Shown here piece by piece: positions 11,429 to 30,970 of a stretch of 64,000 nucleotides of DNA (the first letter of the stretch is position 1; each line of letters starts with the position of its first letter). Where the stretch lies: the IMG/VR virus record IMGVR_UViG_3300030419_008158, positions 124,001 through 188,000 of that record; one strand, 5' to 3'. Below the pieces are notes generated by a model. It saw only the letters and a program-made list of their open reading frames with translations. It made no database searches and had not been told where the DNA came from. Position numbers and translations under genes: made by a program.

Positions 11429-11454
11429 AAATTACACCTATCGTGAGATAAACC

Positions 11455-15668: not shown

Positions 15669-16521
15669 GTGTTCTTAGCTCTCGTATTCTTCTGAGTTGG
15701 TCTGTTGTAGAAAAACCAGATGTTAGTGGCAGTGTCATGATCTTTACTTGATCTGGAATTTTGTCTCTTTTTCTAACTTCTTCTGCAGTCCACTCCCCTC
15801 CTTTTACAACAATTTCTGGCACTAGGCTTTCAATAATATTTCGTAGCTCTTCCTCTGTGTTAAAAACTATTACTTCATCGACATTTTTCATCGACAGCAG
15901 TATTTCTCTTCTAAAGCTTTGATTATTAATAGGTCTGTCTGGGCCCTTCAAGTGTTTTACTCTATCATCAGAGTCTATTGCAATTATAAGTTTTCCACCA
16001 CAACTCTTGGCGAAATTTAGCAAGTCCAAATGACCCTTGTGAAGCACATCAAATACACCGTTTGCAATTACTAAACCAGGAACAGGATCTATTTTTGCTA
16101 TTCGCTTATTGTGACGACCTTCTCCGTACGGAGTTTTTAGCCATGTTTTGACAATATCGATATTTTTTTTCTCACTATTAATCCAAGCTCCCAAGCAAAG
16201 GACATTTGAATCATTATGCTCCCTAGTTTTTTCTGATGTTGTTAGATTGTGGACTAAAGATGCTCTGGCTCCTGTAATTCTATTAGCAACAATAGACATT
16301 CCTACTCCAGTACCACAAATCAATATTCCTTTATTGTTCGGATTGTCTGAGACGATTTGTGCTACTTGGTATGCATAATCTACATAGTCAACTTTTCCAT
16401 GCTCATCATATGGTCCCAAGTCTATCGGAAGAAATCCTAGGGATTTCAAATTTTCAACGACACGCTTTTTTAGCTTTACACCGTTGTGATCAGATGCTAT
16501 TACAACTGTTTTTTCGCTCAT
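15640..16521 (-). CDS. rpiB: RpiB sugar-phosphate isomerase fused to an HldE-type nucleotidyltransferase domain
   Basis: ASDHNG, ILICGTGVGMSIVANR, HNDSNVLCLG, then NGVFDVLHKGH, GPDRP, VKGGEW. Confidence 0.88.
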   Translation of the reverse strand: MSEKTVVIASDHNGVKLKKRVVENLKSLGFLPIDLGPYDEHGKVDYVDYAYQVAQIVSDNPNNKGILICGTGVGMSIVANRITGARASLVHNLTTSEKTREHNDSNVLCLGAWINSEKKNIDIVKTWLKTPYGEGRHNKRIAKIDPVPGLVIANGVFDVLHKGHLDLLNFAKSCGGKLIIAIDSDDRVKHLKGPDRPINNQSFRREILLSMKNVDEVIVFNTEEELRNIIESLVPEIVVKGGEWTAEEVRKRDKIPDQVKIMTLPLTSGFSTTDQLRRIRELRTHEKISPSDR

Positions 16522-17289
16522 CTAAAACCTCGGAAGTGTAACATTGATTGGAAGATTGACACACTGAATTCCATGCCGGGCCAAATTTATTGCCAAAGCC
16601 ATCTCATTACAAATTGGGTGAGAATTTGGAGTTTTTTCAATGTCTGAATAGATCTTCTTGTAAGATAAGAATGTAGTACCATAAATCATCATATTTTCAA
16701 AACTTGAAAAATTTAACCAATCTGAAATGTGTCCATATTTTTTGGACATGTCGATTGCGTACATGTAGCTTTGATCAAATTGAGACATAATCAGGGGTGT
16801 CATTACATTAATGTCAAATCGACACCTTATCACGGCGTCATACTCCTGACCTGTTTTGAGACAGTGATGATACATCATTTGTGTCGACTCGTAAATAGAT
16901 GACCACATGCTAAGATTATTTGAAAGAATAAACTTTTCGTAGTCTCTATGTGTCATTCCTGCTTCTTCAGCTTCTTTTTCTGTTCCCGGAGAATAAACAT
17001 CAAATGTTCTTTTCAAAGACACACTTGGCATTAGAAATTTTCTAGTGGGTTCAACTTTACTGGCTAAGGGTGCATAGAGTTGTATAGCTTTTTCGTGAGA
17101 ATTAGAATCTATTCTCTTTTTCTTCCACCCACCATCTCCTCCGTATTTATAAGGCTCATTTTCATCTTCATAAGACCAGGCATGTAAAAATATATCTGGA
17201 TTGTTCGGTTCAATAATGTTTTTTAGAATGCTTTCGTAGCACTCATCAAGAAATCTAGGTTGGCCGGACATGCACAATGCAACTTTCAC
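16522..17289 (-). CDS. Hypothetical glycan-associated protein
   Basis: MKVALCMSGQPR start, YDAVIRCRFD, SDWLNF; type commonly seen in polysaccharide loci; function unassigned. Confidence 0.55.
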   Translation of the reverse strand: MKVALCMSGQPRFLDECYESILKNIIEPNNPDIFLHAWSYEDENEPYKYGGDGGWKKKRIDSNSHEKAIQLYAPLASKVEPTRKFLMPSVSLKRTFDVYSPGTEKEAEEAGMTHRDYEKFILSNNLSMWSSIYESTQMMYHHCLKTGQEYDAVIRCRFDINVMTPLIMSQFDQSYMYAIDMSKKYGHISDWLNFSSFENMMIYGTTFLSYKKIYSDIEKTPNSHPICNEMALAINLARHGIQCVNLPINVTLPRF

Positions 17290-18305
17290 TTTGTCTCCTT
17301 TGAGTCTATCTGTGATTTTGCATATTCCACGACTGCTTCAACACCCTTGACAAGACCAACTTTTGTCTTCCAACCTAAAATATTTTCTACCTTTTTAGAA
17401 GACCCTAAGCTAAATTTGTTCACCTCAGAAACTACTCTTTCTTGCGGAAGAGGTAGAGGGCCACTAAATAGTTCTGGGTATTTGTCCCAAAACTTTTCTG
17501 CACTTTCAAAAGATGGCTCAATATAAGTTCCGAAACTTTCACAAAATATTTTGTATATTTCTTTTACAGAATATGCCGTGCCGGACGAAACATTGAAGAT
17601 TTCTCCCGGAACATCACTTCGCTTTAAACACATTTCTACCAAATCAACCAGATCGCTTATATAGACATAGTCTCTCTTTTGATCTCCGCTGGAGAAGAAT
17701 GTGGGCTTTTCACCCTGAAGGAGGCATTTTGTAATGTATCCCATTAGTGGGGGATGTTTTCTTCTAAAATCTTGATGTGGTCCGTAAACATTAAAGAATC
17801 TAAGGGTAATAACATCCATTTTGTATGTGGAAGCATATGCTTTACACAGTGATTCACACTGTAATTTACTGACTGCGTAAACGAGGTCAGGATTGGACTC
17901 GAGTCTATCTTCCACAAAGGGAGTAATTTTACAATTTTCATAAATTGCACTAGTGCTGGCAAAAATAAACTTCTTAATTCCCTTTTTTCTGCATGCTTCT
18001 AGCATATTGGCAGTTCCAGTAACGTTATTATCGATTGTCTTGCTAGGGTTTAGCTGACAATCTGGCAAAGGGGCAATTCCCGCCATGTGTATTACAGCAT
18101 CAACTCCCTCTAAGTGCTGTCCTATGTCTTTGTCTCTAACGTCTGCATGTATAAACTCACCTACTTTTTTACCGTCGACTGTGAGATTATCTTCATGGCC
18201 ATAGCTCATATTATCTAAAAGGACAACGTAGTGTCCGTTTTCTTCAAGATGATGTCCTATTTGTGAACCAATAAATCCGGCTCCACCTGTTATAAGAATT
18301 TTCAC
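17286..18305 (-). CDS. NAD-dependent epimerase/dehydratase (extended SDR)
   Basis: GGAGFIGS, YAVSK, LRFFNVYGP, GDQKRDY. Confidence 0.9.
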   Translation of the reverse strand: MKILITGGAGFIGSQIGHHLEENGHYVVLLDNMSYGHEDNLTVDGKKVGEFIHADVRDKDIGQHLEGVDAVIHMAGIAPLPDCQLNPSKTIDNNVTGTANMLEACRKKGIKKFIFASTSAIYENCKITPFVEDRLESNPDLVYAVSKLQCESLCKAYASTYKMDVITLRFFNVYGPHQDFRRKHPPLMGYITKCLLQGEKPTFFSSGDQKRDYVYISDLVDLVEMCLKRSDVPGEIFNVSSGTAYSVKEIYKIFCESFGTYIEPSFESAEKFWDKYPELFSGPLPLPQERVVSEVNKFSLGSSKKVENILGWKTKVGLVKGVEAVVEYAKSQIDSKETK

Positions 18306-19375
18306 GTAATGTATTCTCCTAGAAGTTCATTTCTTTTTATTGATATTGATTGACAGGATGGGTGTGGGTTTGTTGGAGCAAAATCATTTATAATAATTCG
18401 TCTGCTGTGATTGCATCCTGAGATTATTTGTTTGTATTGAATATCATTATCTTTTAGTAATTGCCTAAACTCTAGAAGAAATTCTTCTGTTCTAGCTGTC
18501 ATAAAAATTATCTCATTCCCTTCCTTCGACAGCCTTTTGACAGTGTCAATATTTTCTTGAATGGGTTCAAAATAGTTTGACCAGTTATTTTTACCAAATC
18601 TTCCACTATTTTTCAAAAGAACACCATCAATATCAAAGATGTATGTTTTGTAACGCCCTAGTTCTTCATACCAATCTTCTTTAGTGCCCCAGTCTATAAA
18701 TTCATCTGCCTCGACATATTCAAAAATAGCCTCTTCACATACTATTAGATAAGAAATTACATGACTAACATATACTTCACTTAGATTTTTGTAGACTTCA
18801 TGATCTCGTATTTTTTCATACGCTCGACAAAATTCATTGGCATCCGATGAATATACACCCAAACAAATAATGTTAGAAACCATCTCTTTTTCGATGATGT
18901 CTGTTATAATGTCGTCGTCATTTTTAATGATAAAGCTTTTTTGCTGCACTCTATCAATATTTGATTTAGCAGATACACTCAAACCAACGATATGATTTGA
19001 GCTACTAGGAAGCTTTGAACGAACAAGACAGTCGGTATCTTTTATAGTTATTTTTCCTGTCACAGAAAGCTGCTTTAAAGTCTCGTATACAGTCTCAGAT
19101 GCAGAGGATGTCGGATTTTTTAGAGATAGAACTTCTACTTTTTTTCCAAAAACCTGATTTAGAATCGTATCAGCATCATACTTTTCACAATGATCATTTA
19201 GGACTGTGACTATAATTCTGTCAAATGAATTTGGATTCTCTTCAAGAAAAGACGAAATCACCTTGTCAATCATAAGTCGGCCATCTGGGTGTGTCAAAAG
19301 CCACTTGGGTCTCATGCCGGGATATCTACTTGATTTTCCAGCTGCTGGTACTATTAATGTTGATTTATTTTTCAA
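18302..19375 (-). CDS. Sugar nucleotidyltransferase fused to a C-terminal HAD phosphatase
   Basis: VPAAGKSSRYP...PKW N-terminal motif and DWGT; then YIFDIDGVL...MTAR...IIINDF. Confidence 0.75.
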   Translation of the reverse strand: MKNKSTLIVPAAGKSSRYPGMRPKWLLTHPDGRLMIDKVISSFLEENPNSFDRIIVTVLNDHCEKYDADTILNQVFGKKVEVLSLKNPTSSASETVYETLKQLSVTGKITIKDTDCLVRSKLPSSSNHIVGLSVSAKSNIDRVQQKSFIIKNDDDIITDIIEKEMVSNIICLGVYSSDANEFCRAYEKIRDHEVYKNLSEVYVSHVISYLIVCEEAIFEYVEADEFIDWGTKEDWYEELGRYKTYIFDIDGVLLKNSGRFGKNNWSNYFEPIQENIDTVKRLSKEGNEIIFMTARTEEFLLEFRQLLKDNDIQYKQIISGCNHSRRIIINDFAPTNPHPSCQSISIKRNELLGEYIT

Positions 19376-20162
19376 AATGATTTTCCATATGAGCTAATCT
19401 TTCTTCTAGAATCTTTAAAGTATGTGTATCTGCGTATGGGATTATTCTTATGATATTCATAACCAAAAGTCTTTTGACTGCTTCCATTTCGTCATTATTT
19501 AGTCTTTCACACATTTTATTATAGAGAAACATGCACTTTATTACAGGCGGAGATGTGCTATTTCTCCACGACCACATCGATATGATGTCTTGAAAAACTT
19601 TGGCGCAGTCAATGTATTTTGTCTCAGCAAATGAATCTAAAAAATCGATAAGATAGACATCAGAGTTGTAGATAATAATATTTTCAAATGTTAGGTCGCC
19701 ATGACACATCGATGATGTCATTTTTGTCCAATCATAGTCTAAACAATATTGAAAGTATTTTTCAAATTTTGAAGAGACATGACTTCTGAGGTCATCTACT
19801 TTTTTCTCAACTAACGATGCTAGATTACTTTTATCTTCTTTGCGAAATAAAAAATTAGTAATTTTTTCAAAAATATGAAGAATATCATTTGAACTACTAG
19901 AGGAAACATAGTTGCTAAATGTACAGCCACTTATGTACTCCATGTCGAAATAAAACATGTTGTCATGTGTGCCAAAGTTATATATTTTTGGCGTTTTTAG
20001 GACAGAATCTCTAAAAAGAAGCTGTTTTTTCATTTGACTTTTTAGTCGATTGTTGTATTCAATACTAGGTGATATTTTTCTTACAAACTTTCTTTCTAAT
20101 TCTTTGTCAATATGAAGCTCAACTTTGCAACCTGAGTGTCCTTTGAGTTTCTTTACAAACAT
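19365..20162 (-). CDS. APH/choline-kinase-like phosphotransferase
   Basis: KGHSGC, VRKIS, HGDLTFEN, YLIDFLD. Confidence 0.75.
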   Translation of the reverse strand: MFVKKLKGHSGCKVELHIDKELERKFVRKISPSIEYNNRLKSQMKKQLLFRDSVLKTPKIYNFGTHDNMFYFDMEYISGCTFSNYVSSSSSNDILHIFEKITNFLFRKEDKSNLASLVEKKVDDLRSHVSSKFEKYFQYCLDYDWTKMTSSMCHGDLTFENIIIYNSDVYLIDFLDSFAETKYIDCAKVFQDIISMWSWRNSTSPPVIKCMFLYNKMCERLNNDEMEAVKRLLVMNIIRIIPYADTHTLKILEERLAHMENHFEK

Positions 20163-20187
20163 GTTTTTCTATCAATTCTCACCCTCG

Positions 20188-20994
20188 CTAGCGAAATATT
20201 TGATACATTATTTCAAAATTTCTATGCTGGTGTGCATTACACTGAAGAACTAGAAATGAGGTTGGTATTTTCTTTGCTAAATACCCAATAGCTAGCTGTT
20301 CATTATTCATTCTTCCAGCGCCAATCATCAAGTTTTGTAAAACATCATCACACCATGCTCTAAGAGCAATGCTTCCGAATTTATCTACTCCGAAAAGGCC
20401 GCCCCACATAAAAGATCTATTGTCCCAAAAATAGTCTTCTGTCATATCTCCGTTGATAAGATCCGGATAGGGCGAAACATACATCTGATATAGTATTTTT
20501 GCTGTATGTTCTTTTATTTGATTTTCAAAAGTTGGTCCCGGTAAGGGTTGAGTAAAATCAATGTCAGGCGCGTGTCGAGAAATACCGGCGTCCATCCAGA
20601 AAAAATAGTCGCTATTAAAGTGATTCTCTAATGCAGCTCTTTCGACCCAAGCAAATTTAGAATATTGAATTATGGAGTAAAGACTAGTCTTGCATTCTAT
20701 CCTACCTGGATCTTTAATCCTGTCCTGGTATTCCTCGCTGGATAGAACTGCATCAATTTTTTCTTTCAAATGATAACACGGAACTTCATCAAGTTTTTGA
20801 TTGATTATTTTTGTTTCTCTACCAGGAGGTCTGTTTTCTTCAATAAACGAATTCAAACTCTCATCACAGTAGATAACCATCGGGGCACCCATTTTAAGAG
20901 TGTCCGCAAACCACTCATAATACTGCTCCATTCCGCGGCCGTCGACATCTTTTCTTCCAATATCAAATAAAGCTGTTACCACTGTTGCTTTCAT
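20188..20994 (-). CDS. HtrL/YibB (WlaTC)-like glycosyltransferase
   Basis: TVVTALFDIGR, YFFWMDAGI, GGLFG, NNEQ. Confidence 0.7.
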   Translation of the reverse strand: MKATVVTALFDIGRKDVDGRGMEQYYEWFADTLKMGAPMVIYCDESLNSFIEENRPPGRETKIINQKLDEVPCYHLKEKIDAVLSSEEYQDRIKDPGRIECKTSLYSIIQYSKFAWVERAALENHFNSDYFFWMDAGISRHAPDIDFTQPLPGPTFENQIKEHTAKILYQMYVSPYPDLINGDMTEDYFWDNRSFMWGGLFGVDKFGSIALRAWCDDVLQNLMIGAGRMNNEQLAIGYLAKKIPTSFLVLQCNAHQHRNFEIMYQIFR

Positions 20995-21950
20995 GTGTTC
21001 TCCTTGTCACATACTTTCTTTACATTCTTTAGATAAATTTGACTAACTATATTTTTCCAATCAAAAGTCTCTGCGTATCTTCTTATTTCGCTTCTCATCT
21101 CAATAGAAACTTCTCTATTTTTTGATATCACACTTTTCACATAGTCAGCATCATCAATTTTGCTTTCCGGTATTATATCAATAAAGGGAAGATCAGCATC
21201 TAAATTGGCTGCTGAAAACTCCGATATAACCAACCCTAGACCGGCTGACATGGCTTCCAAGCAAACTAGTGGGTGTGCTTCTCCGTCGCTGAGCAGTACT
21301 AAGTTAGCAAAATTAGTAAGACCATCGTAAAGTTCATTTTTTGTCCACTCGCCCAAATATCTATCAGATGATGTATCAAACTGTGGCTCGATACAGTTAC
21401 CAACAAAGTAAAGATTTTCTATATCTTGAAACTTTATTTGCCTTTTTCGAAAGTCAATCTTTGCCAGATAAATAGAATCATTGGGGCGCAAACATGTCGG
21501 TTCGTATCTAAAAAGATCAGTTCTTACTCCGTTGGGAACTACATAAAGTCTGTCTTCTGGAATTCCTGATTTTTTATAAATTTCTTTTATTCCCGGTGAG
21601 AGACAAAATACATTCCAGTTACTGTTGACAAATGCCCAAAAGACGTTTCTATAGCCGGCGTCCCACCGGTGTGTCTGTTCTAGATAGCCATAGTGACTAG
21701 TCACAACAACATTTTTCTTTCTTATGTGGGGAGCCAGATGTGCCCATTCATCATACTGAAAGTGGATAAAATCAGCATCTGATGCATTTACTAGTTCGAC
21801 TATTAGACTGTGATCTTTTGTGTTTATAATTTCCACTTCGTGACACATGGAAATTAGTGTCTTTCTGTAGTCATCAATTAATATCTCTACTGCGCCCCAA
21901 CCCTTTGGAGGTATTGGCATTTCCCCGGGACCTACTATACAAAATTTCAT
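20991..21950 (-). CDS. GT-B glycosyltransferase (GT4-like)
   Basis: IPPKGWGAVE, VVPNGV, EAHPLVCLEAMSAG. Confidence 0.8.
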   Translation of the reverse strand: MKFCIVGPGEMPIPPKGWGAVEILIDDYRKTLISMCHEVEIINTKDHSLIVELVNASDADFIHFQYDEWAHLAPHIRKKNVVVTSHYGYLEQTHRWDAGYRNVFWAFVNSNWNVFCLSPGIKEIYKKSGIPEDRLYVVPNGVRTDLFRYEPTCLRPNDSIYLAKIDFRKRQIKFQDIENLYFVGNCIEPQFDTSSDRYLGEWTKNELYDGLTNFANLVLLSDGEAHPLVCLEAMSAGLGLVISEFSAANLDADLPFIDIIPESKIDDADYVKSVISKNREVSIEMRSEIRRYAETFDWKNIVSQIYLKNVKKVCDKENT

Positions 21951-22672
21951 TTTACACCTGCGAATCTAGGGAATTCACTCATGTCTTTATGAAGATGAAC
22001 AAACTTAGTTGGATAGTTTTCTCTAATATTATTATAGCCATTTTGAGGCTGGGCATAGCCCGGATGAAGTGTTCTCACTAGACTGCTATTTTCTAAAAAG
22101 TATTTGTTTGTGTGTGATTCATCATGCCAAACTGCCACGATTTCGTCTTCTAAATCTTCATCCACTCTTCGCTCCAAAACACTTATCATTTCTAAAAACT
22201 CTAATGTCTTTCCGCCCCAAAAACACCCTTGCCTGTATTGAGATAGATCATATTGATCATCGTATATATTAGCTCGAGATCTAGTGTCGGTTTCGAACGC
22301 TCCAATTTTCCCCAAAAAACCTGGATGTTGCACACCAATCAAAGGCTCATTTCCAAAAAGATCGTCTGGGTCTACCTTCCCAACACACCACATGTCTGCG
22401 TCGACAAAAAAAGAATAATCAAATTTAGAAATTTGTTTTCTCATCTGATTCATGTACTTAAATCGATAGAGGGTAATATAAGGCCAACCCTGGTGATCTA
22501 TTTTCATGCACGTAACGTTTTCTTTATTGAATAATTCATAGTCAATATCGTCTGTGTACACAAAATAATGTTTCTCGATGCCTGGTAGAAAGTTCTTCTG
22601 TAGGCCTTCATAATAGCCCTCAAAAAAGCCTTTATATCTGCCAGTTCCGATAAAATTAATTGCTACTTTCAT
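21947..22672 (-). CDS. GT6 alpha-1,3-Gal/GalNAc transferase (ABO-transferase family)
   Basis: FIGTGRY, FVYTD, WPYITLYRF, FVDADM (DxD), QGCFWGG, WHDESHTNKY. Start moved to 22672 (ATGA overlap). Confidence 0.88.
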   Translation of the reverse strand: MKVAINFIGTGRYKGFFEGYYEGLQKNFLPGIEKHYFVYTDDIDYELFNKENVTCMKIDHQGWPYITLYRFKYMNQMRKQISKFDYSFFVDADMWCVGKVDPDDLFGNEPLIGVQHPGFLGKIGAFETDTRSRANIYDDQYDLSQYRQGCFWGGKTLEFLEMISVLERRVDEDLEDEIVAVWHDESHTNKYFLENSSLVRTLHPGYAQPQNGYNNIRENYPTKFVHLHKDMSEFPRFAGVK

Positions 22673-23436
22673 ATTGTCACCCAATTGCTTCTGTAAATAG
22701 AAGACCAATCTGAGGGTCCTTCACTAGAAAACCATTTTTTTGGAGCTATGACTCCACTAGAATTGCTAAGCCATGCACCCCACCAGCTAAACGAAGAATT
22801 CGCAATAATATGCGAGGTACACATGGACATCATGCACATTTCTGTTGCATCGTCACCATCCTCAGCAAAATAAAATCTATCGTCGCTAAAAATATTCTTA
22901 CACCACTCTATGTCGTCACTAAAAACCAGAAAAATACAGTCAGGAATATTTTGAATTACTATGTTGATCGCTTCTTGATAGTAGTCAGTGCCTAGATTTG
23001 TATGATATCCCGACAAGCTAAGATAATCACCTCTTCTGACATGTAGAGAGCAAATATTTTTTCCCTCAAATGGTGTCATTAGGTTTTTAGCGTTTTCTTG
23101 TATTTTTTTGTGAAATGTGAACTCTTTTCTAAGTGATTTTTCACAGTGATTAAAATATCCTGGTGATTGAAAATAGCCGTGTATGTCAGTTTTGTCAGGT
23201 GCCATAAAAATATTAGGAGAGAATAAAAAATTTGGCTCTTCATACCGGTACTTAGGCGCATAATTTTCCGGAATTATTTCGGCATTAGTCATAGAAAACA
23301 CGCTAAAAAGCTGATGGTTATTTTTAGGAATTGCTATTTTTTGTCCTCTCAAGAATCCTACGGAAAACAATGTTGCGTATTGAAACATTTGATTTCCTAG
23401 TCTTCCATTTTTTCCTAGCTCACTATAAGTTATCAT
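22669..23436 (-). CDS. GT11 alpha-1,2-fucosyltransferase
   Basis: GRLGNQMFQYA, GYFQS, HVRRGDY, IIANSSFSWWGAWL. Start moved to 23436. Confidence 0.92.
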   Translation of the reverse strand: MITYSELGKNGRLGNQMFQYATLFSVGFLRGQKIAIPKNNHQLFSVFSMTNAEIIPENYAPKYRYEEPNFLFSPNIFMAPDKTDIHGYFQSPGYFNHCEKSLRKEFTFHKKIQENAKNLMTPFEGKNICSLHVRRGDYLSLSGYHTNLGTDYYQEAINIVIQNIPDCIFLVFSDDIEWCKNIFSDDRFYFAEDGDDATEMCMMSMCTSHIIANSSFSWWGAWLSNSSGVIAPKKWFSSEGPSDWSSIYRSNWVTI

Positions 23437-23437
23437 T

Positions 23438-24124
23438 TTATCCCACTCCGTAAAAGGATCTAAAGACACTACTTAGAAATGCTGGTGCTTTATGGTTATA
23501 GTTGGGATTATCCTTGTATGTGTAATCTAGCAAGATCTCGTCAACAATTCCAAATTTATACCACTGCATAGCTCTAAGCCACAAACTATAATCTTCTGCC
23601 ATCCAAAATGTATCATCGTATCCGCCCAGCTTTTCCATAATCTTTTTTCTAAAAACGACACCTGGGTGTGGTATGACATTCCACCCTCTAAGAAGAGCTG
23701 CTTTTATATCCATGTCTTTGGTGGGGCGAAGTGGTTCTTGCTTTGTAGGTAAAAAATTTTCATCTACCAATCTGATTTGTGTACTACAAATGTCGATATC
23801 AGAATTTTCAGACAAATATTTTATCTGCTTTTCTAGCTTTTCAGGGTACCATAAATCATCTGCATCTTGTCGACCGATGAGATCAAATTTAGAAACTGAT
23901 AGGCCCTTATTAAGGGCCGGAACTAATCCGGGCGAAGAATGTTCCACCACAACTCTATTATCCTTCGAAGCAAAATCTAAAAGTATTTTTTCAGTTTTGT
24001 CAGAACTATCATTAACAACACAAATTAGCTCAAAATTCGAATATGTTTGTGATAAAACTGACTTTACTGCTCTCTCAAGAGTCTTTTCAGCATTTCTTGC
24101 CGGAAGAATAATAGATATTTTCAA
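23438..24124 (-). CDS. GT2 glycosyltransferase
   Basis: ISIILPARN, ICVVNDSSD, ALNKG, RQDADD, EDYSLWLR. Confidence 0.9.
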   Translation of the reverse strand: MKISIILPARNAEKTLERAVKSVLSQTYSNFELICVVNDSSDKTEKILLDFASKDNRVVVEHSSPGLVPALNKGLSVSKFDLIGRQDADDLWYPEKLEKQIKYLSENSDIDICSTQIRLVDENFLPTKQEPLRPTKDMDIKAALLRGWNVIPHPGVVFRKKIMEKLGGYDDTFWMAEDYSLWLRAMQWYKFGIVDEILLDYTYKDNPNYNHKAPAFLSSVFRSFYGVG

Positions 24125-26016
24125 AACTCGATCCGTATACTGGGGGTGGGATTTTTCCAGTCTACCTTAGAATGAAATACATGCCCTCCGGTTTCCTTTG
24201 AAAGCTTTTTAGCCAATGTCTCTATTTCATCGTCTGTCACTTCTGACCACGGTTTATCAAAGAACTTGTTATTTTCTGACGTGTCTTCATGTGTTATGTT
24301 ATACAAGCTTTCCCAATGTCTTTGCCAAAAATTTTTGTAAGTCTTGATTTTTCTAGAAATGTCCATCCAGGAAAAATGTTCTACTGCTGGCAGAAGATTT
24401 ACGCAGTTTTGAAGCCATTGCTCGTATGCTTTCAGTGCTTCATTGTTTCCGTTTAAAGCCTGGTGTCTGGCAATATGTGCCGGTTCATTGTAAAAATTAG
24501 CATGCGGAATTATTTCGAACGTCTCAGCATGCACATAATCACACCCATCTGTCCCTTGTGACGCATAAAGATCTCCATTTTCATCCTGCATTCTCATTTG
24601 CTTTGGAATTCCATGGGTAATGTGAGGTAGATTTTTACTAAGCCGCCACTTCCATGGATTTACGTCGACTCTAACTTTATTTTTAGATCCCCAGTATTCT
24701 ACTACAGGAAATGAAACTAAGTCCACAGTTTGTGGCCATGATCGACAAAAAGATCTAACTTTTTCTAAAGTACCTTCCGGTACAACTTCATCAGCATCCA
24801 TTTGCCAGCAATATTCCATCGTACATCTTTTTCTAGACTCAGCTTTTTGTGCCCCATCGAAGACTGCAGACCTTGGGTGATCCCAATCTCTTTCAACTAA
24901 AAAGACTTTGAGCTTATCTTCCTTTTCTGACCACTCCAAAAGCTTTTCCCACGTCCCATCAGATGAACCACCGTCGACGACAACAACCTCGTCACAAAAA
25001 TTTATCATCGAGCTAATACACTCTTCAAAAGGATATTTTTGCTCAACACAGTTTAGTGTAGTTGTATAGCCTGAAATTGTCGGCTGATAGTTAGCATTTT
25101 TCATCTCTTGACGCCAAAATAAATCTCTACTGCCGTATAAATACTCTTCTATTTCCTGGATATTCTCAGTTACAAACCACTCCTCGTCTTTGTGCTGAAC
25201 GTATTCATTGAGTTCTAATTTGCACCCTAGAAGCTTGGCCTCTATTACCATTCTAGGACATGTATCATTGCCCATGGGAAGATATACAAATCCTTCTGCA
25301 GTTGAAAGTTTTTCTAATAGATCTGCATACGGAAGGCCCCAAACTACTTCATATTCTAAGTTGTTTTGTTTGCACCATGCTTCTGCTTGTTCAGCTCCTT
25401 TTATCCATGAGTTAGATCCTAAAACTATCCATCCTTTTCTTTTCTTAGATTTAGAGTCTACTCTTAGCTTCTTTACAGTCACAAAAAACTCATCATTAAA
25501 GACTGAACTTAGAACTGTATTATTCTTGTCTTGTAAGAATGGAAATTTTTCGAAATATACGCTTTGTTGCTTTTCACCCATCCAATAGAGTGTTTTGGCA
25601 CCGTAATAGAAAGCAGAAATCATTTTTCCATGCTGTGATTGATCACAGTCGCACTCTGAACCTTCTGCAAATAGGTGTTTTTCTGCAGATCTATACTTAC
25701 AGTACTTATAATCATACTCTAGAACTGAATAGCTTATATTGGCAACAATTGTAGGAATCAATTCTGGGTTCATTCCGGAAAAGTTTCCAAATATCCAATG
25801 TTTACCATGACCTTGCTCTAAAAGTTCAACAGAAACCCTTTTAGAGTGTACTTTCTGATATTTTACTGGGCACTTCTCGATAAGCGCTTCAGTAGTAAGC
25901 TCAGCTCCGCCCACATAATCATCTACGAACATGTCTGAGACGAATATTATTTCTGCATCTTCTTCTAGCGAGAATGTGTCTACATTTTTAGCTGAGAAAG
26001 GACTGTTTAAGTTCAT
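24121..26016 (-). CDS. Two-domain glycosyltransferase (GT-B-like + GT2)
   Basis: FVYLP...DTCPRMVIEAKLLGC, then YPFEECISSM...VVVVDGGSSDGT...QMDADE. Confidence 0.8.
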   Translation of the reverse strand: MNLNSPFSAKNVDTFSLEEDAEIIFVSDMFVDDYVGGAELTTEALIEKCPVKYQKVHSKRVSVELLEQGHGKHWIFGNFSGMNPELIPTIVANISYSVLEYDYKYCKYRSAEKHLFAEGSECDCDQSQHGKMISAFYYGAKTLYWMGEKQQSVYFEKFPFLQDKNNTVLSSVFNDEFFVTVKKLRVDSKSKKRKGWIVLGSNSWIKGAEQAEAWCKQNNLEYEVVWGLPYADLLEKLSTAEGFVYLPMGNDTCPRMVIEAKLLGCKLELNEYVQHKDEEWFVTENIQEIEEYLYGSRDLFWRQEMKNANYQPTISGYTTTLNCVEQKYPFEECISSMINFCDEVVVVDGGSSDGTWEKLLEWSEKEDKLKVFLVERDWDHPRSAVFDGAQKAESRKRCTMEYCWQMDADEVVPEGTLEKVRSFCRSWPQTVDLVSFPVVEYWGSKNKVRVDVNPWKWRLSKNLPHITHGIPKQMRMQDENGDLYASQGTDGCDYVHAETFEIIPHANFYNEPAHIARHQALNGNNEALKAYEQWLQNCVNLLPAVEHFSWMDISRKIKTYKNFWQRHWESLYNITHEDTSENNKFFDKPWSEVTDDEIETLAKKLSKETGGHVFHSKVDWKNPTPSIRIEF

Positions 26017-26237: not shown

Positions 26238-27683
26238 CTATGAAACTACTTGATAACCTTTCATTGGATCAAAATCGATTAGGACATCGCCCGATGATGA
26301 ATCTATGGAAAGAGCATATCCAACAACTCTTACGTACTCGCCGGCGCTTGAGGGGGCTGCTGCATCAAATTGTCCTGCGGTACCTTCTGATACATAGACA
26401 GCTGAGCCTGTCACAAATGTTCCATTGAATTGACCAGAAGGAATTCTATAATACCCCTTGGTGAAAACACCATAGTATTGAGAAGGTCCGCCCAATCCAA
26501 TGCCTAATTTTGCTGTTGCACCGGTTGATACTGATGAAGCATCTGCCAGATTCCACGTGCCGTCTGTGTGCAAGTAGTATAATGCACCTGCAGTAAGCAT
26601 CTCATTAGCACCCGGGGAGAAAACAAGAAAGTCTCCTCTTCCCCACCCACTTTGGAACTGTCCGGTAAATGAATAATTCTGAATATCAAGCCAGTCTTCT
26701 TCCCCTCCAAACTTTTTAAAGCCCCCAGACACAATTAAATCGCCCTGGGAGACTGCGGCTCCATAAGACCCGGGCTGGCCGTTGGATCCTGCTGTTCCGG
26801 AAATGAAAAGAACAACATCAGTCCCCACACCGGTTACACGCCCACCACCTATAATGTTTTGAGTTGATCTGAGATGAAGAGAATCGACTTCAGAGTGATG
26901 ATTGTACCCACCATACAAATTTCCTGATACAACTAGATCACCACCGAATATTGAAACTCCTTCGTTATTTTTACCACCTTCTGATCCGGACACAAAGAAG
27001 TTAGTATCGGACGGTGCTTCGTCGGAGAGGACTAAAACTTGACCCTCGTTGCTGCTTTCAACCATCGTGAGCATATCAACTCCGCCGGCCTGGAAGTTAA
27101 TTTTGTCTGCAGCAGGAAAATCCATGAAAGTATTGCTATCACCCAGATGCTGCAACCTCTTTGAGATGGCAATATCAGATGTATGACCTCCATCAATCCC
27201 TACAACAAAAGTTCCAGCGCCCATTGAGCTTACGCCATTTGGTCCGAATCCAAAACGACCATCAGCCCGAGCTCTAAATAGTACATCACCGTCACCATCT
27301 TCCATCTCTAGAATGTGGGTACCAGATCCGTTGCCATCTGCTAATAGCTTTAAAACATGGCCTGAATCGCTTTGATCGTTATGTAATTTGGCAGCGAAAC
27401 CCTCATGAACATTTGCCTTAGATTCTAGTGCACCTGTTAAAATAAGAGTTGTACCATTATATGTAAGATTAGATTCTACAGAAGCCTCGTCTGAGTCTTT
27501 ATAGGTCAGCACCCCGTTAGATGTTGATCCGTCAAAAGATATTCCGCCCCCACCACCAGATGCAGCTATAGTAACATTATCTCCGGAGCCACTAGATATT
27601 GTAATGTTAGATCCGGCGATTAAAAATGATGATCCATCAGAAAGTTTTGTATGTGAACCTGAAACTGGCCCTATTAACGGCAT
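26238..27683 (-). CDS. Virion fibre/appendage protein (481 aa)
   Basis: Gly/Ser-rich; shares SGSxTxLxDG and FxVSG...FGGD modules with its neighbours; distinct C-terminal domain. Confidence 0.65.
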   Translation of the reverse strand: MPLIGPVSGSHTKLSDGSSFLIAGSNITISSGSGDNVTIAASGGGGGISFDGSTSNGVLTYKDSDEASVESNLTYNGTTLILTGALESKANVHEGFAAKLHNDQSDSGHVLKLLADGNGSGTHILEMEDGDGDVLFRARADGRFGFGPNGVSSMGAGTFVVGIDGGHTSDIAISKRLQHLGDSNTFMDFPAADKINFQAGGVDMLTMVESSNEGQVLVLSDEAPSDTNFFVSGSEGGKNNEGVSIFGGDLVVSGNLYGGYNHHSEVDSLHLRSTQNIIGGGRVTGVGTDVVLFISGTAGSNGQPGSYGAAVSQGDLIVSGGFKKFGGEEDWLDIQNYSFTGQFQSGWGRGDFLVFSPGANEMLTAGALYYLHTDGTWNLADASSVSTGATAKLGIGLGGPSQYYGVFTKGYYRIPSGQFNGTFVTGSAVYVSEGTAGQFDAAAPSSAGEYVRVVGYALSIDSSSGDVLIDFDPMKGYQVVS

Positions 27684-27697
27684 TTAGCCCTCCCAGA

Positions 27698-30600
27698 TTA
27701 GTCGGTGATTTCTTCCATAAGAAGTCTGAAAAGTTTTCCGTTGTTGTTATTTCTAAGAGTGAGATAATTCTCTTCCTCTATGACTGTCCAGTTTCCTCTA
27801 TCATTCTGTAAGTGGAGGTCACCGGTGTATATGTTTGCCCATCTGTTAGTTGCACTGCCTAGATTTAGAGAGTTGTCTACACCCGGTAAAAGGTTACCGG
27901 AAGTAATCAAGCGCCCACCGAAAACGGAAACTCCTGAAGAACCGGTTTTAGATCCTGAAACGAACATGCTAGTATCTGATCCAGGGCCACCGTATTGGCC
28001 TCCCAGCATAACTGTACTGGATCCAAGTACTGTTAGATCGGCTCTAAGGTTAAGCATAGATCCACCCGTGGGTGAAGTATAACCACCTCTAACAGTACCT
28101 GACATAACAACATCACTGTCGAAAATAGCTCGAGCTTTTTCTCCTTCCTCTTGATATCCAAATTGCATCCCTCCGTAGAGAGGAGTTCGAACTCCTGAAA
28201 CGAAAAGTATTGCATCACTTACTGGATTAGTATTGGCAATTGAATCCGGAGATGCCATAACCAAGGGCGAACCGGCCATGTGAAGTTCGGATCCACCGGT
28301 GTATCCTTGGCTCCATCCTCCCAACAAAGAACCTGATATTACTACGTCTCCACCAAAGAGAGCTGCTCCGTGAGATTCTCCGTTATGCTTTGAATCGACA
28401 GATCCCGAAACGTAAAAATAGACGTCTTCCGGATTTGTAACATTTCCCACCGCAACATTTCGATCGGAATCAACACCAATAACAGTGGTTCCGTCCTCTT
28501 GAATCTGAACGCCTGTTTGACCATCCAGTTTTAGAGGTCCTCCAGAAGTTGTCACTGTAGAAGAAGCTGTACCAGCAATATTAAAGGCACCAGATGTAGC
28601 ATCAATGTCCAGAGTTTCTCCTGCAAGTGTCAGTGCGCCTGAAGATGTAGAAAGATTAGTGGCACCTGCACCATCAATAGAAATAGTGCTTTCAGAATCT
28701 ATGGCAATTGAACCGTGTGCATCTATGTCGATGGCATCATCAGAATTGATATCTAAATCTCCGGTACCTGCTGTGATTGTGATACCACCGGCAGCATGCG
28801 AAGATGTTAGAAGAAGAACACCAGCACCGGTCTTTCCTGCGTTAATGATAACGCCGCCAGCAGTTGAAGTTAGCTTGAGAGAGTCATTACCCGTTCCGTC
28901 ATTATTAATGACCTCAAGATCTCCATCAGATTCAGACCAGATGTAGTTTCCAGCGTCTCTAAAGAACAACTTAGCATCACCTGTACTGGCTCCGACTGTA
29001 GAATCTCCTGTAGAGTCATTAAAGGTGAGGTCAGCCGCGGCTCCGAAGGATCCACCGTTATTATATTGATATTGTGTATCTGATCCCGCAACTGATCCGC
29101 CCCCGCCAGAAGCAGAAATTGTAACAGCACCCGAAGAACCGGTTGTGATTGTTATGTTAGACCCAGCGATAAATGCTGAAGTACCGTCAGTCAACTTTGT
29201 ATGTGACCCAGACATTTTAGTTGCAAAAACCTGTCCCGTGTATAAGACACCCGAAACAAATGTATCACCTCTAAACGTCGCGACACCGGAGCCTGTATAT
29301 TTTCCACCAATAGACCCGGAAACAGCAAAATATTCATCGCTAGCTAGAGTAACCCCACCAATAGCAACCTCTCTATCATTAGTGACTGCTATGACTGTGG
29401 TTCCGTCTTCCTGGATGTTTACTCCAACTTGTCCATCTAAGTTTAGTGCACCGCCAGAAGTTGTCACTGTGGAGGCAGATGTGCCTGCGATGTTGAATGC
29501 CCCGGAAGTGGCATCAATATCCAGAGATTCTCCTGCCAGAGTTAGAGCCCCAGAAGATGTCTGAAGATCTGTCGCGCCGCCACCTTGAATAGAAACTGTC
29601 GAAGCACCATCAATTGTTAATGCACCTGAAGCGTCGATATCGAGAGTAGAAGCATCAACATCAATAGCAACATCAGATGTTGTACCGATATTGATACCGC
29701 CGGCTCCATGAACAGTAAGAGCACCGGCTGAAGTTGACAAGTTTGAAGCCGCACCGGCATCTATAGAGATACCCGCTTCTGAATCGATTGTCATAGCACC
29801 TACTGAATCGATATCTAATGTGTTACCGAACTGTAAGTTACCAGCTGCTGAACCTGATATAGTGAGAGCACCAGATGTTGTAGTAAGGTTTGTGGCACCT
29901 GCCGCGTCAATAGAAACAGTTGAAGAACCATCGATGGTAATAGCACCAGAAGCATCGATATCGAGAGCTGCTGAATTAAGATCAACAGTCTCACCGGTTC
30001 CGTCTAGAGTAAGTGTACCGCCCAATGATTTTATAGTAACAGTACTGTCAGCTGCTTCACCAATAGTAATGGTACGCGTACCGTCAGTACCGATGTTGAT
30101 AGCTTGGTCTACGTCATCATTACCAATATTAATGGCGGCCGCGGATGAGTTGAGTGAAATAGCACCCGAACCGTCAATGTCCACTGTTGTTGCATTAGCA
30201 ACTGCGACCGCTCTTGCATCTGAAATGGTAATAACTGAAGTTCCATTCTCTTGAATATTTACGCCTGTTTGACCGTCTAGACTTAGTGCACCACCAGAAG
30301 TTGTTACTGTGGAGGCAGATGTACCAGCAATATTAAAGGCACCACCCGTTGCGTCGACATCTAGGGATTCTCCAGCAAGAGTTAGTGCACCAGCACTAGT
30401 CGTAAAATTAGATGCTGCACCTGCATCGATTGATATCGCACCTACAGCATCAACAGTCACAGCATCGTCAGAATTAATGTCTACATCACCCGTACCTGCG
30501 GCTACCTTGACACCACCATCAGCATGTGAAGCAGACAAAAGAAGCACACCAGCGCCTGATTTTCCTGCTTTAATGATCACCCCACCCGCTGTTGAGGTGA

Positions 30601-30955: not shown

Positions 30956-30970
30956 TTTATCTCTCCAATG

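What the first reader, a model, noticed from the sequence alone, without database searches (positions are those of the whole stretch)
21947..23436. Blood-group-like glycan kit in a phage: coupled GT11 + GT6 with its own GDP-fucose supply
Seen: an alpha-1,2-fucosyltransferase overlapping (ATGA) a GT6 gene, with gmd and fcl in the same island (5579-7485). Established: GT11 makes the Fuc-alpha1,2-Gal H epitope and GT6 adds alpha-1,3-Gal or GalNAc to give B or A antigens, as in E. coli O86. Most bacterial GT6s have NXN, whereas vertebrate ones have DXD. This GT6 has DAD, and has Q-G-C where human GTA/GTB have L-G-G or M-G-A. Inference: a metal-dependent enzyme, with the bulkier residues favouring Gal over GalNAc, building an ABO-like branched epitope on virion proteins or the host surface.
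Basis: partly seen in the sequence, partly recalled or inferred. Interest (0 to 1): 0.8.

Follow-up and report, generated by a model that had tools for sequence, protein, structure and literature searches.

The report
Phage blood-group-B-like glycan gene pair
A marine jumbo phage carries an overlapping fucosyltransferase and ABO-type galactosyltransferase gene pair with its own GDP-fucose genes, but the same kit is already annotated in cyanophages, so this is a new member of a known though never-assayed kind.

Summary
On the minus strand, a GT11 gene (22669-23436) overlaps a GT6 gene (21947-22672) by ATGA. A GDP-mannose dehydratase and a GDP-fucose synthase lie at 5579-7485. The GT6 has DAD at the metal site and Q-G-C at the donor-specificity triplet.

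The interpretation also holds on homology and published data, though none of it has been assayed. The GT6 is a minimal, soluble, DXD-type enzyme. Its model matches the H-antigen-dependent Bacteroides and human A/B transferases (TM 0.79-0.87). A published mutagenesis table scores QGC as strictly galactose (B) specific. GT11 and GT6 also occur as one fused protein in nature.

None of this is peculiar to this gene:
- DXD-type phage and marine GT6s were described in 2010-2012.
- DAD and QGC are invariant across 71 close relatives.
- The same overlapping pair is annotated in cultured cyanophages, in some preceded by gmd and fcl.

What is new is the setting, a 284-kb uncultured phage that looks like a "moraphage". 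The pair sits beside the tail-fibre genes, in a block headed by two glycosyltransferases present in every relative read. Two relatives lack the pair, so it looks like a variable outer cap. The island has no membrane or export genes. The target, virion or host envelope, is unresolved.

The parts
22669..23436 (-). GT11 alpha-1,2-fucosyltransferase homologue, 255 aa
   Evidence: Pfam PF01531, E 6e-36, covering profile positions 37-297 of 298. The GT11 motifs G-x-L-G-N-Q-M-F-Q-Y, H-V-R-R-G-D-Y and S-S-F-S-W-W-G-A-W-L are visible in the translation. No sequence match to any solved structure.
21947..22672 (-). [quoted passage not shown] A minimal catalytic domain with DAD (91-93), QGC (148-150) and WHDESH (182-187).
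   Evidence: Pfam PF03414, E 1e-18. PDB sequence hits: BoGT6a E 2e-26, human GTA/GTB about 1e-19. AlphaFold2 model pLDDT 95.5. Foldseek TM 0.85-0.87 to BoGT6a and 0.79-0.85 to GTA/GTB.
20991..21950 (-). GT4-type glycosyltransferase. Overlaps the GT6 stop by ATGA.
   Evidence: Pfam Glyco_transf_4, E 8e-11. Found downstream of GT6 in L002, L004, L088 and L089, directly after it except in L089.
20188..20994 (-). HtrL_YibB family protein, a family linked to the LPS-core gene cluster
   Evidence: Pfam PF09612, E 6e-17. Conserved in L002 and L004.
23438..24124 (-). Small GT2 glycosyltransferase, directly upstream of GT11
   Evidence: Pfam PF00535, E 6e-30. A small GT2 follows the large GT2 in every lineage member whose region could be read, including L093 and L101, which lack GT11-GT6.
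24121..26016 (-). Large two-domain glycosyltransferase, 631 aa. A GT2 domain at about 331-423 follows an N-terminal part that may be GT-B-like. It is the first gene of the conserved block.
   Evidence: Pfam PF00535, E 8e-12. ESM Atlas: the nearest clusters are almost entirely viral; structural matches of residues 1-310 to GT1/GT9-type proteins are weak, TM 0.41-0.46. Present in all lineage loci read. No match in GenBank phages.
5579..6589 (-). GDP-mannose 4,6-dehydratase (Gmd)
   Evidence: NCBIfam TIGR01472, 458 bits against a cutoff of 415. Pfam GDP_Man_Dehyd, E 1e-127.
6547..7485 (-). GDP-L-fucose synthase (Fcl). The true start is probably Met12.
   Evidence: The 18 best PDB hits are all GDP-L-fucose synthases; human 4e5y scores E 7e-77 and the catalytic positions align. 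The NCBIfam Fcl model is the best hit but below its cutoff.
1310..26016 (-). The whole single-strand glycan island, 27 genes. It holds 8 glycosyltransferase genes (counting the weak Glyco_trans_1_2 match at 11455-12450), four SDR sugar-nucleotide enzymes including Gmd and Fcl, a methyltransferase, a radical SAM enzyme, a carbamoyltransferase, a heptose-like NDP-sugar pathway, DUF7796, an NTP-transferase/HAD protein and a kinase-like protein.
   Evidence: Pfam and NCBIfam scans. No transmembrane-like segment in any product, so there is no Wzx, Wzy, ligase or priming transferase.
26238..38041 (-). Three large proteins directly upstream of the glycosyltransferase block (481, 1085 and 2356 aa). 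The largest is a repetitive Ser/Thr/Gly-rich fibre with a tail-spike-type C-terminus. These are context and a candidate acceptor.
   Evidence: PF12219 End_tail_spike, E 5e-7, at residues 2227-2314. The repeats are visible in the translation. Large proteins, one carrying the same domain, precede the block in L088, L089, L004, L093 and L101.

Best explanation
The pair encodes two consecutive steps of a phage-encoded, cytoplasmic glycan assembly line.

- Phage Gmd and Fcl convert GDP-mannose to GDP-L-fucose.
- The GT11 enzyme adds Fuc alpha-1,2 to a terminal beta-galactose, giving an H-type disaccharide.
- The GT6 enzyme then adds alpha-1,3-galactose to the same galactose. It is soluble, has only the minimal catalytic domain, and is predicted to need a divalent metal and to use UDP-Gal.
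- The product is a blood-group-B-like branched cap, Gal-alpha1,3(Fuc-alpha1,2)Gal.

The cap sits on a core laid down by the large and small GT2 enzymes, which are present in every relative of the lineage that could be read. GT11-GT6 is a variable outer module that some relatives lack.

The island has no flippase, polymerase, ligase or priming transferase, and the GT6 lacks the membrane-anchoring tail of bacterial O-antigen GT6s. The block also always adjoins the tail-fibre genes. I therefore think the most likely acceptor is a virion protein, fibre or capsid, glycosylated in the cytoplasm before assembly.

Shown here: the gene identities, motifs, fold, synteny and distribution. Inferred: the donor, the acceptor, the order of the two steps and the target.
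For: Gene identities and fold.

DXD and QGC are invariant in 71 of 71 close relatives.

QGC is B-specific in the human A-transferase backbone (PMC5377540).

The DXD prokaryotic enzyme PaGT6 is metal-dependent, needs a 2'-fucosylated acceptor, and its clade lacks the BHB membrane domain (PMC3516806).

Acceptor residues His116, Gly118, Phe119, Tyr146, Trp182 and Glu185 match those of BoGT6a and GTA/GTB.

GT11 is directly upstream with a 4-nt overlap in jumbo-phage relatives and in cyanophages. A natural GT11-GT6 fusion exists. GT11 lies within 6 kb in 48 of the 80 best cellular GT6 loci.

Gmd and Fcl.

No membrane proteins in the island.

The block adjoins large proteins that precede it in every relative read, one of which carries a tail-spike domain.

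The large and small GT2 genes are conserved while GT11-GT6 is absent in L093 and L101.
Against: - No biochemical assay exists for any QGC-type prokaryotic or phage GT6.
- The QGC result comes from a human backbone. The same paper reports one motif whose behaviour did not transfer between the human and a bacterial backbone.
- Thr245 of the human enzyme (Thr134 in BoGT6a), which contacts the acceptor galactose, is an invariant Glu in this clade.
- The residue at the fucose-accommodating A7 position is probably His226. This is inferred from a C-terminal pattern and was not aligned by a tool.
- Conserved synteny with fibre genes among related phages is expected whatever the function.
- O-antigen glycosyltransferases other than the priming enzyme are also soluble or peripheral. 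Lack of TM segments does not exclude a host lipid-linked acceptor.
- Only 64 kb of a 284-kb genome was examined.
Confidence: 0.42

Rival explanations
1. The enzymology is the same, but the acceptor is a host envelope glycan. This could be an undecaprenyl-linked O-antigen, capsule or general O-glycosylation intermediate, primed and exported by host machinery. Infection would then repaint the cell surface, for example to exclude superinfection or to stop progeny adsorbing to debris.
For: Every characterised bacterial GT6/GT11 pair works on lipid-linked LPS repeat units: E. coli O86, H. mustelae and B. ovatus (cited in PMC3516806 and PMC5377540). The cyanophage literature files gmd, fcl, the alpha-1,2-fucosyltransferase and neighbouring glycosyltransferases under cell-wall modification (PMC9602691). 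HtrL_YibB is a family linked to the LPS-core cluster. The elongating glycosyltransferases of O-antigen clusters also lack TM helices.
Against: The 25-kb island has no priming transferase, flippase, polymerase or ligase. The GT6 lacks the BHB membrane-association tail of the O-antigen enzymes (241 aa; PMC3516806). Two glycosyltransferases of the block are conserved across the lineage and sit next to fibre genes, unlike typical accessory host-modifying genes. A lytic jumbo phage has little time for envelope turnover.
Confidence: 0.3
2. The two enzymes do not cooperate on an ABO-like epitope. The GT6 uses a different acceptor (non-fucosylated, or a sugar other than galactose) or a different donor. 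Or the GT11 fucosylates another position, and adjacency only reflects operon packing.
For: Ten of the 27 junctions in the island are 4-nt overlaps, so the overlap itself carries no functional signal. GT6 domains in this clade are also fused to other partners: GT_PLOD, GT2, GT4, GT31-like and a methyltransferase. The Thr245 equivalent is an invariant Glu, and the A7 position is uncertain. L089 has an extra GT7C gene inserted before GT11.
Against: The GT11-then-GT6 order, with a 4-nt overlap in most of the loci read, is kept between lineages whose GT6s are only 42-47% identical. A GT11-GT6 fusion exists. The A1 and A2 discriminators match the H-dependent enzymes. The only assayed DXD prokaryotic GT6 rejects LacNAc and needs the 2'-fucose (PMC3516806).
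Confidence: 0.15
3. The glycosyltransferase block hypermodifies phage DNA, glycosylating hydroxymethylated bases with an oligosaccharide to evade restriction.
For: Multi-sugar DNA glycosylation by virus-encoded glycosyltransferases is known (Pyle et al. 2024, as cited in PMC12619734). All the enzymes are cytoplasmic. A PD-(D/E)XK nuclease gene lies inside the island.
Against: No base hydroxymethylase or DNA-glycosyltransferase family was found in the window. The GT6 keeps the residues that bind a galactoside acceptor. As far as I know, no GT6 or GT11 member acts on DNA. The heavy sugar tailoring (carbamoyl, methyl, heptose-like) is typical of surface glycans.
Confidence: 0.05

Closest known systems
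GT6 'clade 1': minimal-domain, DXD-type prokaryotic GT6 of cyanophage P-SSM2, its marine-metagenome homologues and Parachlamydia PaGT6 (Brew et al. 2010; Thiyagarajan et al. 2012, PMC3516806)
   Same: About 240 aa with the catalytic domain only, an intact DXD, no C-terminal BHB membrane domain, and a marine origin. PaGT6 is metal-dependent and needs a 2'-fucosylated acceptor.
   Different: PaGT6 transfers GalNAc. Parachlamydiales-type relatives carry AGG or CGG at the specificity triplet, whereas this gene and the phage clade carry QGC. The host phage here is a 284-kb non-cyanophage. Its GT6 is only 42-47% identical to cyanophage GT6s.
GT11-GT6 gene pair of cultured cyanomyoviruses (S-CAM9, S-8S53, ACG-2014f, Bellamy and others) and the gmd-fcl-GT11-GT6 operon of a 257-kb cyanophage-like contig
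   Same: The same gene order and the same 4-nt overlap in S-CAM9 and S-8S53, with DAD and QGC (or QAC) motifs. A UDP-glucose 4-epimerase, or gmd and fcl, lies directly upstream. DUF7796 and an NTP-transferase/HAD protein are nearby, as in the window. The S-SCSM1 paper lists gmd, fcl and an alpha-1,2-fucosyltransferase (PMC9602691).
   Different: In cyanophages the pair sits in an accessory island among tRNAs and metabolic genes, not beside fibre genes and not after the large and small GT2 genes. The cyanophage enzymes have HPCH where this clade has HPGF. None has been assayed.
E. coli O86 O-antigen genes wbnK (GT11) and wbnI (GT6), which make a blood-group-B-like epitope
   Same: The same two families, the same predicted product type, and GDP-fucose genes in the cluster.
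   Different: The O86 cluster has wzx and wzy and works on undecaprenyl-linked units. Almost all bacterial GT6s, a group that includes the O-antigen enzymes, are NXN-type, presumably metal-independent, and carry a membrane-binding tail (PMC3516806); I did not check WbnI itself. The phage island has no export genes, and its GT6 is DXD-type and soluble.
'Moraphages', aquatic jumbo phages with a histone-H1-like Hc1 protein, PhoH and four core glycosyltransferase orthogroups (Perez-Hernandez et al. 2025, PMC12619734)
   Same: A 284-kb aquatic contig. PhoH and an Hc1-like 67-aa gene are adjacent in the window and in 11 related IMG/VR contigs. Two glycosyltransferase genes of the block recur in every relative read.
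   Different: Membership was not tested against that paper's genomes or marker trees. The paper does not identify its glycosyltransferases as GT11 or GT6 and does not mention fucose.
Virion glycosylation by virus-encoded cytoplasmic glycosyltransferases (mycobacteriophage capsid and tail-tube glycans, Freeman et al. 2023; chlorovirus and mimivirus glycans)
   Same: Soluble virus-encoded glycosyltransferases together with the virus's own sugar-nucleotide supply, and no lipid carrier or export genes.
   Different: There are no glycoproteomic data here, and the glycosyltransferase families are unrelated. The analogy is functional only.

Membership tests
CAZy GT6 / Pfam PF03414 | Significant match to the family model above the curated threshold | tested here: met
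   67.4 bits against a cutoff of 25, E 1e-18.
CAZy GT6 / Pfam PF03414 | GT-A fold superposable on solved GT6 enzymes | tested here: met
   Model pLDDT 95.5. TM 0.85-0.87 to BoGT6a and 0.79-0.85 to human GTA/GTB.
CAZy GT6 / Pfam PF03414 | Catalytic Glu (human E303, BoGT6a E192) within the W-H-D-E-S-H motif | tested here: met
   WHDESH at 182-187 aligns with the same motif in BoGT6a and the human enzyme. It is kept in 69 of 71 close relatives.
CAZy GT6 / Pfam PF03414 | Retaining alpha-1,3 transfer of Gal or GalNAc | not testable with these tools
   Needs an enzyme assay.
GT6 clade 1 (phage, marine and Parachlamydia DXD type) | Intact D-X-D metal-binding motif in place of N-X-N | tested here: met
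   DAD at 91-93 aligns with NAN of BoGT6a and DVD of the human enzyme. D91 and D93 are invariant.
GT6 clade 1 (phage, marine and Parachlamydia DXD type) | Minimal catalytic domain without the C-terminal basic-hydrophobic-basic membrane domain | tested here: met
   241 aa, aligned end to end with the truncated BoGT6a catalytic domain. No hydrophobic segment; maximum 19-residue Kyte-Doolittle mean 0.64.
GT6 clade 1 (phage, marine and Parachlamydia DXD type) | Activity that depends on a divalent metal | not testable with these tools
   Inferred from the DXD motif and from PaGT6 (PMC3516806).
H-antigen-dependent (ABO-type) GT6 as opposed to alpha3GT type | Acceptor discriminators: His at A1 (Gln in alpha3GT), a small residue at A2 (Trp in alpha3GT), a small residue at A7 (Trp in alpha3GT) | tested here: inconclusive
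   A1 is His116 and A2 is Gly118, both ABO-type (positions defined in PMC3516806). A7 is probably His226, inferred from the H-x-x-K pattern and not aligned by a tool. The Thr245 equivalent is Glu127, which is not conserved.
H-antigen-dependent (ABO-type) GT6 as opposed to alpha3GT type | Genomic linkage to an alpha-1,2-fucosyltransferase | tested here: met
   GT11 is directly upstream in the window and in seven distinct related loci: L002, L004, L088, L089, L090, L086 and L087. A fusion protein, P0125, also exists.
B-type (UDP-Gal) donor specificity | A residue triplet at human codons 266-268 that confers Gal specificity | tested here: met
   QGC at 148-150. In PMC5377540 Table 2, QGC gives no A activity and maximal B activity. 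This is a motif-level test only. The activity of this protein was not tested.
CAZy GT11 / Pfam PF01531 alpha-1,2-fucosyltransferase | Family model match above threshold, and the H-x-R-R-G-D motif | tested here: met
   124.6 bits against a cutoff of 23.9. H-V-R-R-G-D-Y is present in the translation.
CAZy GT11 / Pfam PF01531 alpha-1,2-fucosyltransferase | Transfer of L-fucose from GDP-Fuc to O-2 of a beta-galactoside | not testable with these tools
   Needs an enzyme assay.
De novo GDP-L-fucose pathway (Gmd + Fcl) | Both enzymes present at equivalog level | tested here: met
   Gmd scores 458 bits against a cutoff of 415. Fcl is below the NCBIfam cutoff (245 against 500), but its 18 best PDB hits are all GDP-fucose synthases, the best at E 7e-77, and the catalytic residues align.
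Wzx/Wzy-type O-antigen gene cluster (E. coli O86-like) | Priming phosphoglycosyl transferase, flippase and polymerase encoded in the cluster | tested here: not met
   None of the 28 products between 278 and 26016 has a transmembrane-like segment. The single hit above threshold is the Rossmann N-terminus of an SDR. No such Pfam families were found.
Moraphage lineage (PMC12619734) | Jumbo aquatic phage with Hc1 (PF07432), PhoH and core glycosyltransferases; placement in their marker-gene tree | tested here: inconclusive
   Contig of 284 kb. PhoH: phrog_2765, E 3e-84. An Hc1-like ORF at 40342-40545 is 43-83% identical to the ORFs next to PhoH in the related IMG/VR contigs L092-L102 and 52-53% to those in L002 and L004, where Pfam Hc1 is on record. 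No phylogenetic placement was done.

The most novel reading that the evidence does not exclude
The GT11-GT6 module is the exchangeable outer cap of a glycan that this jumbo-phage lineage attaches to its own tail fibres or capsid in the cytoplasm. The core would be built by the large and small GT2 enzymes found in every relative read. Different relatives would swap the distal enzymes and sugar-nucleotide cassettes. Marine jumbo phages would then carry virion glycan 'serotypes', one of them a blood-group-B-like epitope made by a DXD/QGC enzyme of the clade proposed as ancestral to vertebrate ABO genes.
Probability: 0.25. Interest if true: 0.7.

Novelty: new member of a known kind. Interest (0 to 1): 0.35.

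Why it matters
No phage GT6 or GT11 has been assayed, and no phage-made ABO-like glycan has been seen directly. The DXD, minimal-domain phage and marine clade has been proposed as the ancestor of the vertebrate ABO gene family (PMC3516806). Showing what it makes, and on what, would anchor that hypothesis.

This locus adds two things. First, the pair is not confined to cyanophages. It recurs in an uncultured jumbo-phage lineage, always beside the fibre genes, downstream of two glycosyltransferases present in every relative read, and with no export genes. That gives a concrete candidate for virion glycosylation in marine phages.

Second, the pair behaves as a swappable outer module. That pattern points to diversifying selection on a phage-made surface glycan.

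As a gene-level finding it is ordinary. The enzyme type, its motifs and the gene pairing are already in the literature or in GenBank annotation.

Tried and rejected
- Megablast of the pair against GenBank phages found nothing. The phage has no close cultured relative. Its helicase is at most 33% identical to that of a jumbo Acidobacteria phage.
- tblastn of the 631-aa GT2 against GenBank phages found nothing.
- The single-sequence AlphaFold2 model of the 631-aa protein was unusable (pLDDT 33.8). I did not run a fold search on it and relied on the ESM Atlas record instead. Its GT-B-like matches for the N-terminal part are weak (TM 0.41-0.46).
- GT11 has no sequence match among solved structures.
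- No tRNA genes in the window, so no host clue from them.
- The quick maximum-likelihood tree of 167 GT6 domains recovers the window's clade of 12 close relatives (SH-aLRT 96). It leaves deeper branching unresolved: 63 of 164 inner branches are open. I draw no conclusion about whether the jumbo-phage clade and the cyanophage clade are sisters, or about the direction of transfer.
- The Brew et al. 2010 review was not held in the library. Its content is cited only through PMC3516806.
- I rejected the idea that the ATGA overlap itself shows functional coupling, because it is the commonest junction type in the island.
- I rejected the idea that DAD and QGC are peculiar to this gene, because they are clade-invariant.
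- I did not lay sequencing reads. The runs that hold the sequence are DNA metagenomes kept as contigs, which cannot show expression.


Full report
**What is there**

All genes of interest lie on the minus strand. ORF listing and the sequence itself show a 255-aa gene at 22669-23436. Its TGA stop shares ATGA with the ATG of a 241-aa gene at 21947-22672. The first gene matches Pfam Glyco_transf_11 (E 6e-36) and the second matches Glyco_transf_6 (E 1e-18), both far above the curated cutoffs. The GT6 stop overlaps the next gene, a GT4, in the same way. From the coordinates, ten of the 27 junctions in the island are 4-nt overlaps. The overlap is real, but it is the island's general packing style and says nothing specific about this pair.

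At 5579-6589 there is a GDP-mannose 4,6-dehydratase that passes NCBIfam's equivalog cutoff (458 bits against 415). At 6547-7485 there is a GDP-L-fucose synthase. It falls below the NCBIfam cutoff. However, its 18 best PDB matches are all GDP-fucose synthases, the best being human 4e5y at E 7e-77, and the Ser-x-Cys, Tyr-x-x-x-Lys and His catalytic positions align.

**The GT6 enzyme**

Its best solved relatives by sequence are Bacteroides ovatus BoGT6a (E 2e-26) and the human A/B transferases (about 1e-19). Bovine alpha-1,3-galactosyltransferase, which uses non-fucosylated acceptors, is much weaker at 2e-9. An AlphaFold2 model built on a 29-sequence alignment has pLDDT 95.5. It superposes on BoGT6a at TM 0.85-0.87 and on GTA/GTB at 0.79-0.85.

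In the HMMER alignments:
- DAD (91-93) aligns with NAN of BoGT6a and DVD of the human enzyme.
- QGC (148-150) aligns with AGG of BoGT6a and MGA of a human B-type chain.
- The WHDESH motif with the catalytic Glu is intact.

Thiyagarajan et al. (PMC3516806) define the positions that separate H-antigen-dependent GT6s from alpha3GT. His116 (A1) and Gly118 (A2) are of the H-dependent type. Phe119, Tyr146, Trp182 and Glu185 are conserved. The Thr245 equivalent is Glu127, invariant in this clade. The A7 residue is probably His226, which I inferred from an H-x-x-K pattern and did not get from an alignment.

**Donor and metal**

Yamamoto et al. 2014 (PMC5377540) placed many triplets at codons 266-268 of human A transferase. 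QGC gave no A activity and the highest B activity. They also noted QGC in bacterial 'B gene' sequences. It is a human backbone, and the same paper reports one motif (AYVYGS) that was inactive in the human backbone although the bacterial enzyme carrying it is active.

For metal dependence, the only assayed DXD-type prokaryotic GT6 is Parachlamydia PaGT6. It needs Mn2+ or Mg2+, accepts H trisaccharide or 2'-fucosyllactose, and rejects LacNAc (PMC3516806). PaGT6 transfers GalNAc. Consistent with that, Parachlamydiales, Chlamydiae and Dependentiae relatives carry AGG or CGG together with DAD. As far as I could find, no QGC-type prokaryotic or phage enzyme has ever been assayed.

**How unusual the features are**

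They are not unusual for this clade. [quoted passage not shown] It lacks the C-terminal membrane-binding domain of the NXN bacterial enzymes.

- In my searches, DAD and QGC are invariant in 71 of 71 close relatives (49-83% identical). They are present in 41 and 42, respectively, of 49 cyanophage-type relatives.
- The exhaustive search finds 2342 clusters at 50% identity with E up to 0.001.
- The genome scan finds GT6 relatives at 477 places in bacterial and archaeal species genomes.
- tblastn finds the gene in 72 GenBank phage records, nearly all cyanophages, at 42-47% identity.

**The pairing with GT11 and the fucose supply**

In cyanomyoviruses S-CAM9 and S-8S53 the order is UDP-glucose 4-epimerase, then GT11, then GT6, with the same 4-nt overlap. 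In a 257-kb cyanophage-like contig it is gmd, fcl, GT11, GT6, DUF7796, then an NTP-transferase/HAD protein. The last two families also occur in the window's island. The S-SCSM1 paper lists gmd, fcl, an alpha-1,2-fucosyltransferase and adjacent glycosyltransferases as cell-wall genes (PMC9602691).

Among the 80 best cellular GT6 loci, 48 have a GT11 relative within 6 kb. One metagenomic protein, P0125, is a natural GT11-GT6 fusion. GT6 domains are also found fused to other glycosyltransferase types. The functional coupling is therefore well supported, and the 'kit' is a recurrent, publicly annotated, but biochemically untested module.

**What is different here**

The window belongs to IMG/VR contig 3300030419_008158, which is 284 kb and comes from a marine metagenome.

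It is a phage:
- a head maturation protease (E 2e-38)
- a 2356-aa repetitive fibre with a tail-spike-type C-terminus
- PhoH and a phage-type helicase

It has no close cultured relative.

PhoH lies next to a 67-aa Hc1-like gene in the window and in 11 related IMG/VR contigs. The combination of jumbo size, aquatic origin, Hc1, PhoH and conserved glycosyltransferases matches the 'moraphages' of Perez-Hernandez et al. 2025 (PMC12619734). That paper reports four core glycosyltransferase orthogroups without identifying them, and it predicts Bacteroidota hosts. I did not place the contig in their tree, so this assignment is only likely.

**Anatomy of the block across the lineage**

The same order appears in the window and in four other distinct relatives (L002, 273 kb; L004, 169 kb, with its near-copy L005; L088, 121 kb; L089, 54 kb). 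Their GT6s are 53-61% identical to the window's. The order is: large proteins preceding the block, large GT2 (about 630-660 aa), small GT2, GT11, GT6, GT4, often HtrL_YibB, and then sugar-nucleotide and tailoring genes that differ from phage to phage.

In two further lineage members (L093, 318 kb; L101) the fibre gene, the large GT2 and a small GT2 are present. They are followed by other genes, and no GT11 or GT6 lies within the 5 kb that could be read. The two GT2 enzymes therefore look like the conserved base of the pathway. GT11-GT6 looks like a variable distal module.

The large GT2 has almost only viral relatives in the ESM Atlas. Its N-terminal 310 residues give weak structural matches to GT-B enzymes.

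**Where the glycan goes**

None of the 28 products between 278 and 26016 has a transmembrane-like segment. Pfam finds no priming transferase, flippase, polymerase or ligase. The GT6 lacks a membrane-binding tail.

I lean towards cytoplasmic glycosylation of virion proteins, at about 0.4-0.45, for four reasons:
- the missing export genes and membrane tail
- the constant position beside the fibre genes
- the presence of two glycosyltransferases of the block in every relative read
- the precedents of mycobacteriophage and giant-virus virion glycosylation

Remodelling of a host lipid-linked envelope glycan, using host priming and export, is the main rival at about 0.3. All characterised bacterial GT6/GT11 pairs work that way, and elongating O-antigen transferases are also soluble. 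DNA hypermodification is unlikely. Nothing in the window decides between these.

**Verdict**

The finding is a new member of a known kind and not a new system.

The residual interest has three parts:
- no phage ABO-like glycan has ever been demonstrated
- the pair extends into an uncultured jumbo-phage lineage
- the conserved-base, variable-cap architecture next to fibre genes makes virion glycosylation directly testable

Noticed in passing
window 42866-47321 (-): A complete PrkA (650 aa), DUF444/YeaH (390 aa) and SpoVR (433 aa) trio, a bacterial stress or sporulation-associated kinase operon, is encoded by the phage. PrkA is 30-35% identical to genes in Thermus phages, Ralstonia jumbo phage RsoM2USA and 600-kb metagenomic megaphages.
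   Followed up: partly
window 40342-40545 (-) and 40087-40284 (+): A 67-aa Hc1-like (chlamydial histone H1-like) ORF lies next to PhoH, beside a 65-aa sigma-70 region-4-like ORF on the opposite strand. L002 has the same arrangement. The PhoH-Hc1 neighbourhood recurs in 11 related IMG/VR contigs. This matches the signature reported for 'moraphages' (PMC12619734).
   Followed up: partly
window 12447-16521 (-), also 49005-49475 (-): A run of genes that looks like an unusual NDP-heptose-type pathway: HAD phosphatase, transaldolase/FSA, cupin, AraD-like class II aldolase/epimerase, an HldE-kinase-like PfkB protein, and an RpiB isomerase fused to an HldE-domain-II-like nucleotidyltransferase. A second heptose-1-P adenylyltransferase-like gene lies outside the island.
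   Followed up: no
window 7482-11428 (-): A methyltransferase, a radical SAM enzyme, a 230-aa unknown protein and a NodU/CmcH-type carbamoyltransferase sit together. A radical SAM, methyltransferase and carbamoyltransferase set recurs after the glycosyltransferase block in L004 and L005. This suggests the glycan is methylated and carbamoylated.
   Followed up: no
window 3798-4664 (-): A PD-(D/E)XK nuclease gene (E 2e-24) sits inside the glycan island, between the glycosyltransferase and sugar-nucleotide genes.
   Followed up: no
window 30971-38041 (-): A 2356-aa fibre protein made of many copies of a Gly/Ser/Thr-rich repeat of roughly 90-120 aa, with a phage tail-spike-type C-terminal domain. 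Its G+C (0.46) is clearly higher than that of the adjacent glycan island (0.31-0.43 per gene, mostly 0.35-0.40).
   Followed up: partly
window 6547-7485 (-): The phage GDP-fucose synthase is much closer to the human and other eukaryotic enzymes (262 bits) than to E. coli Fcl (166 bits).
   Followed up: no
window 56406-58499 (-): A 697-aa protein with four MopE-type putative metal-binding motifs (Pfam PF11617, E 8e-17) and no PHROG match.
   Followed up: no
loci L009, L010, L013 (genome contigs): DXD-type GT6 relatives, 41-43% identical, occur on contigs binned as DPANN archaea (Woesearchaeota, Nanoarchaeota, Pacearchaeota) and in many CPR/Patescibacteria, Dependentiae and Omnitrophota MAGs. 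The 2014 literature stated that GT6 is absent from archaea. Some of these contigs could be misbinned viral DNA, for example L006, a 2.2-kb 'Dehalococcoidia' contig at 65% identity.
   Followed up: no
window 278-1021 (-): A 247-aa protein with weak similarity to sigma-70 region 2 and to a phage late sigma factor (Pfam E 2e-4, PHROG E 1e-5) lies at the downstream end of the island.
   Followed up: no
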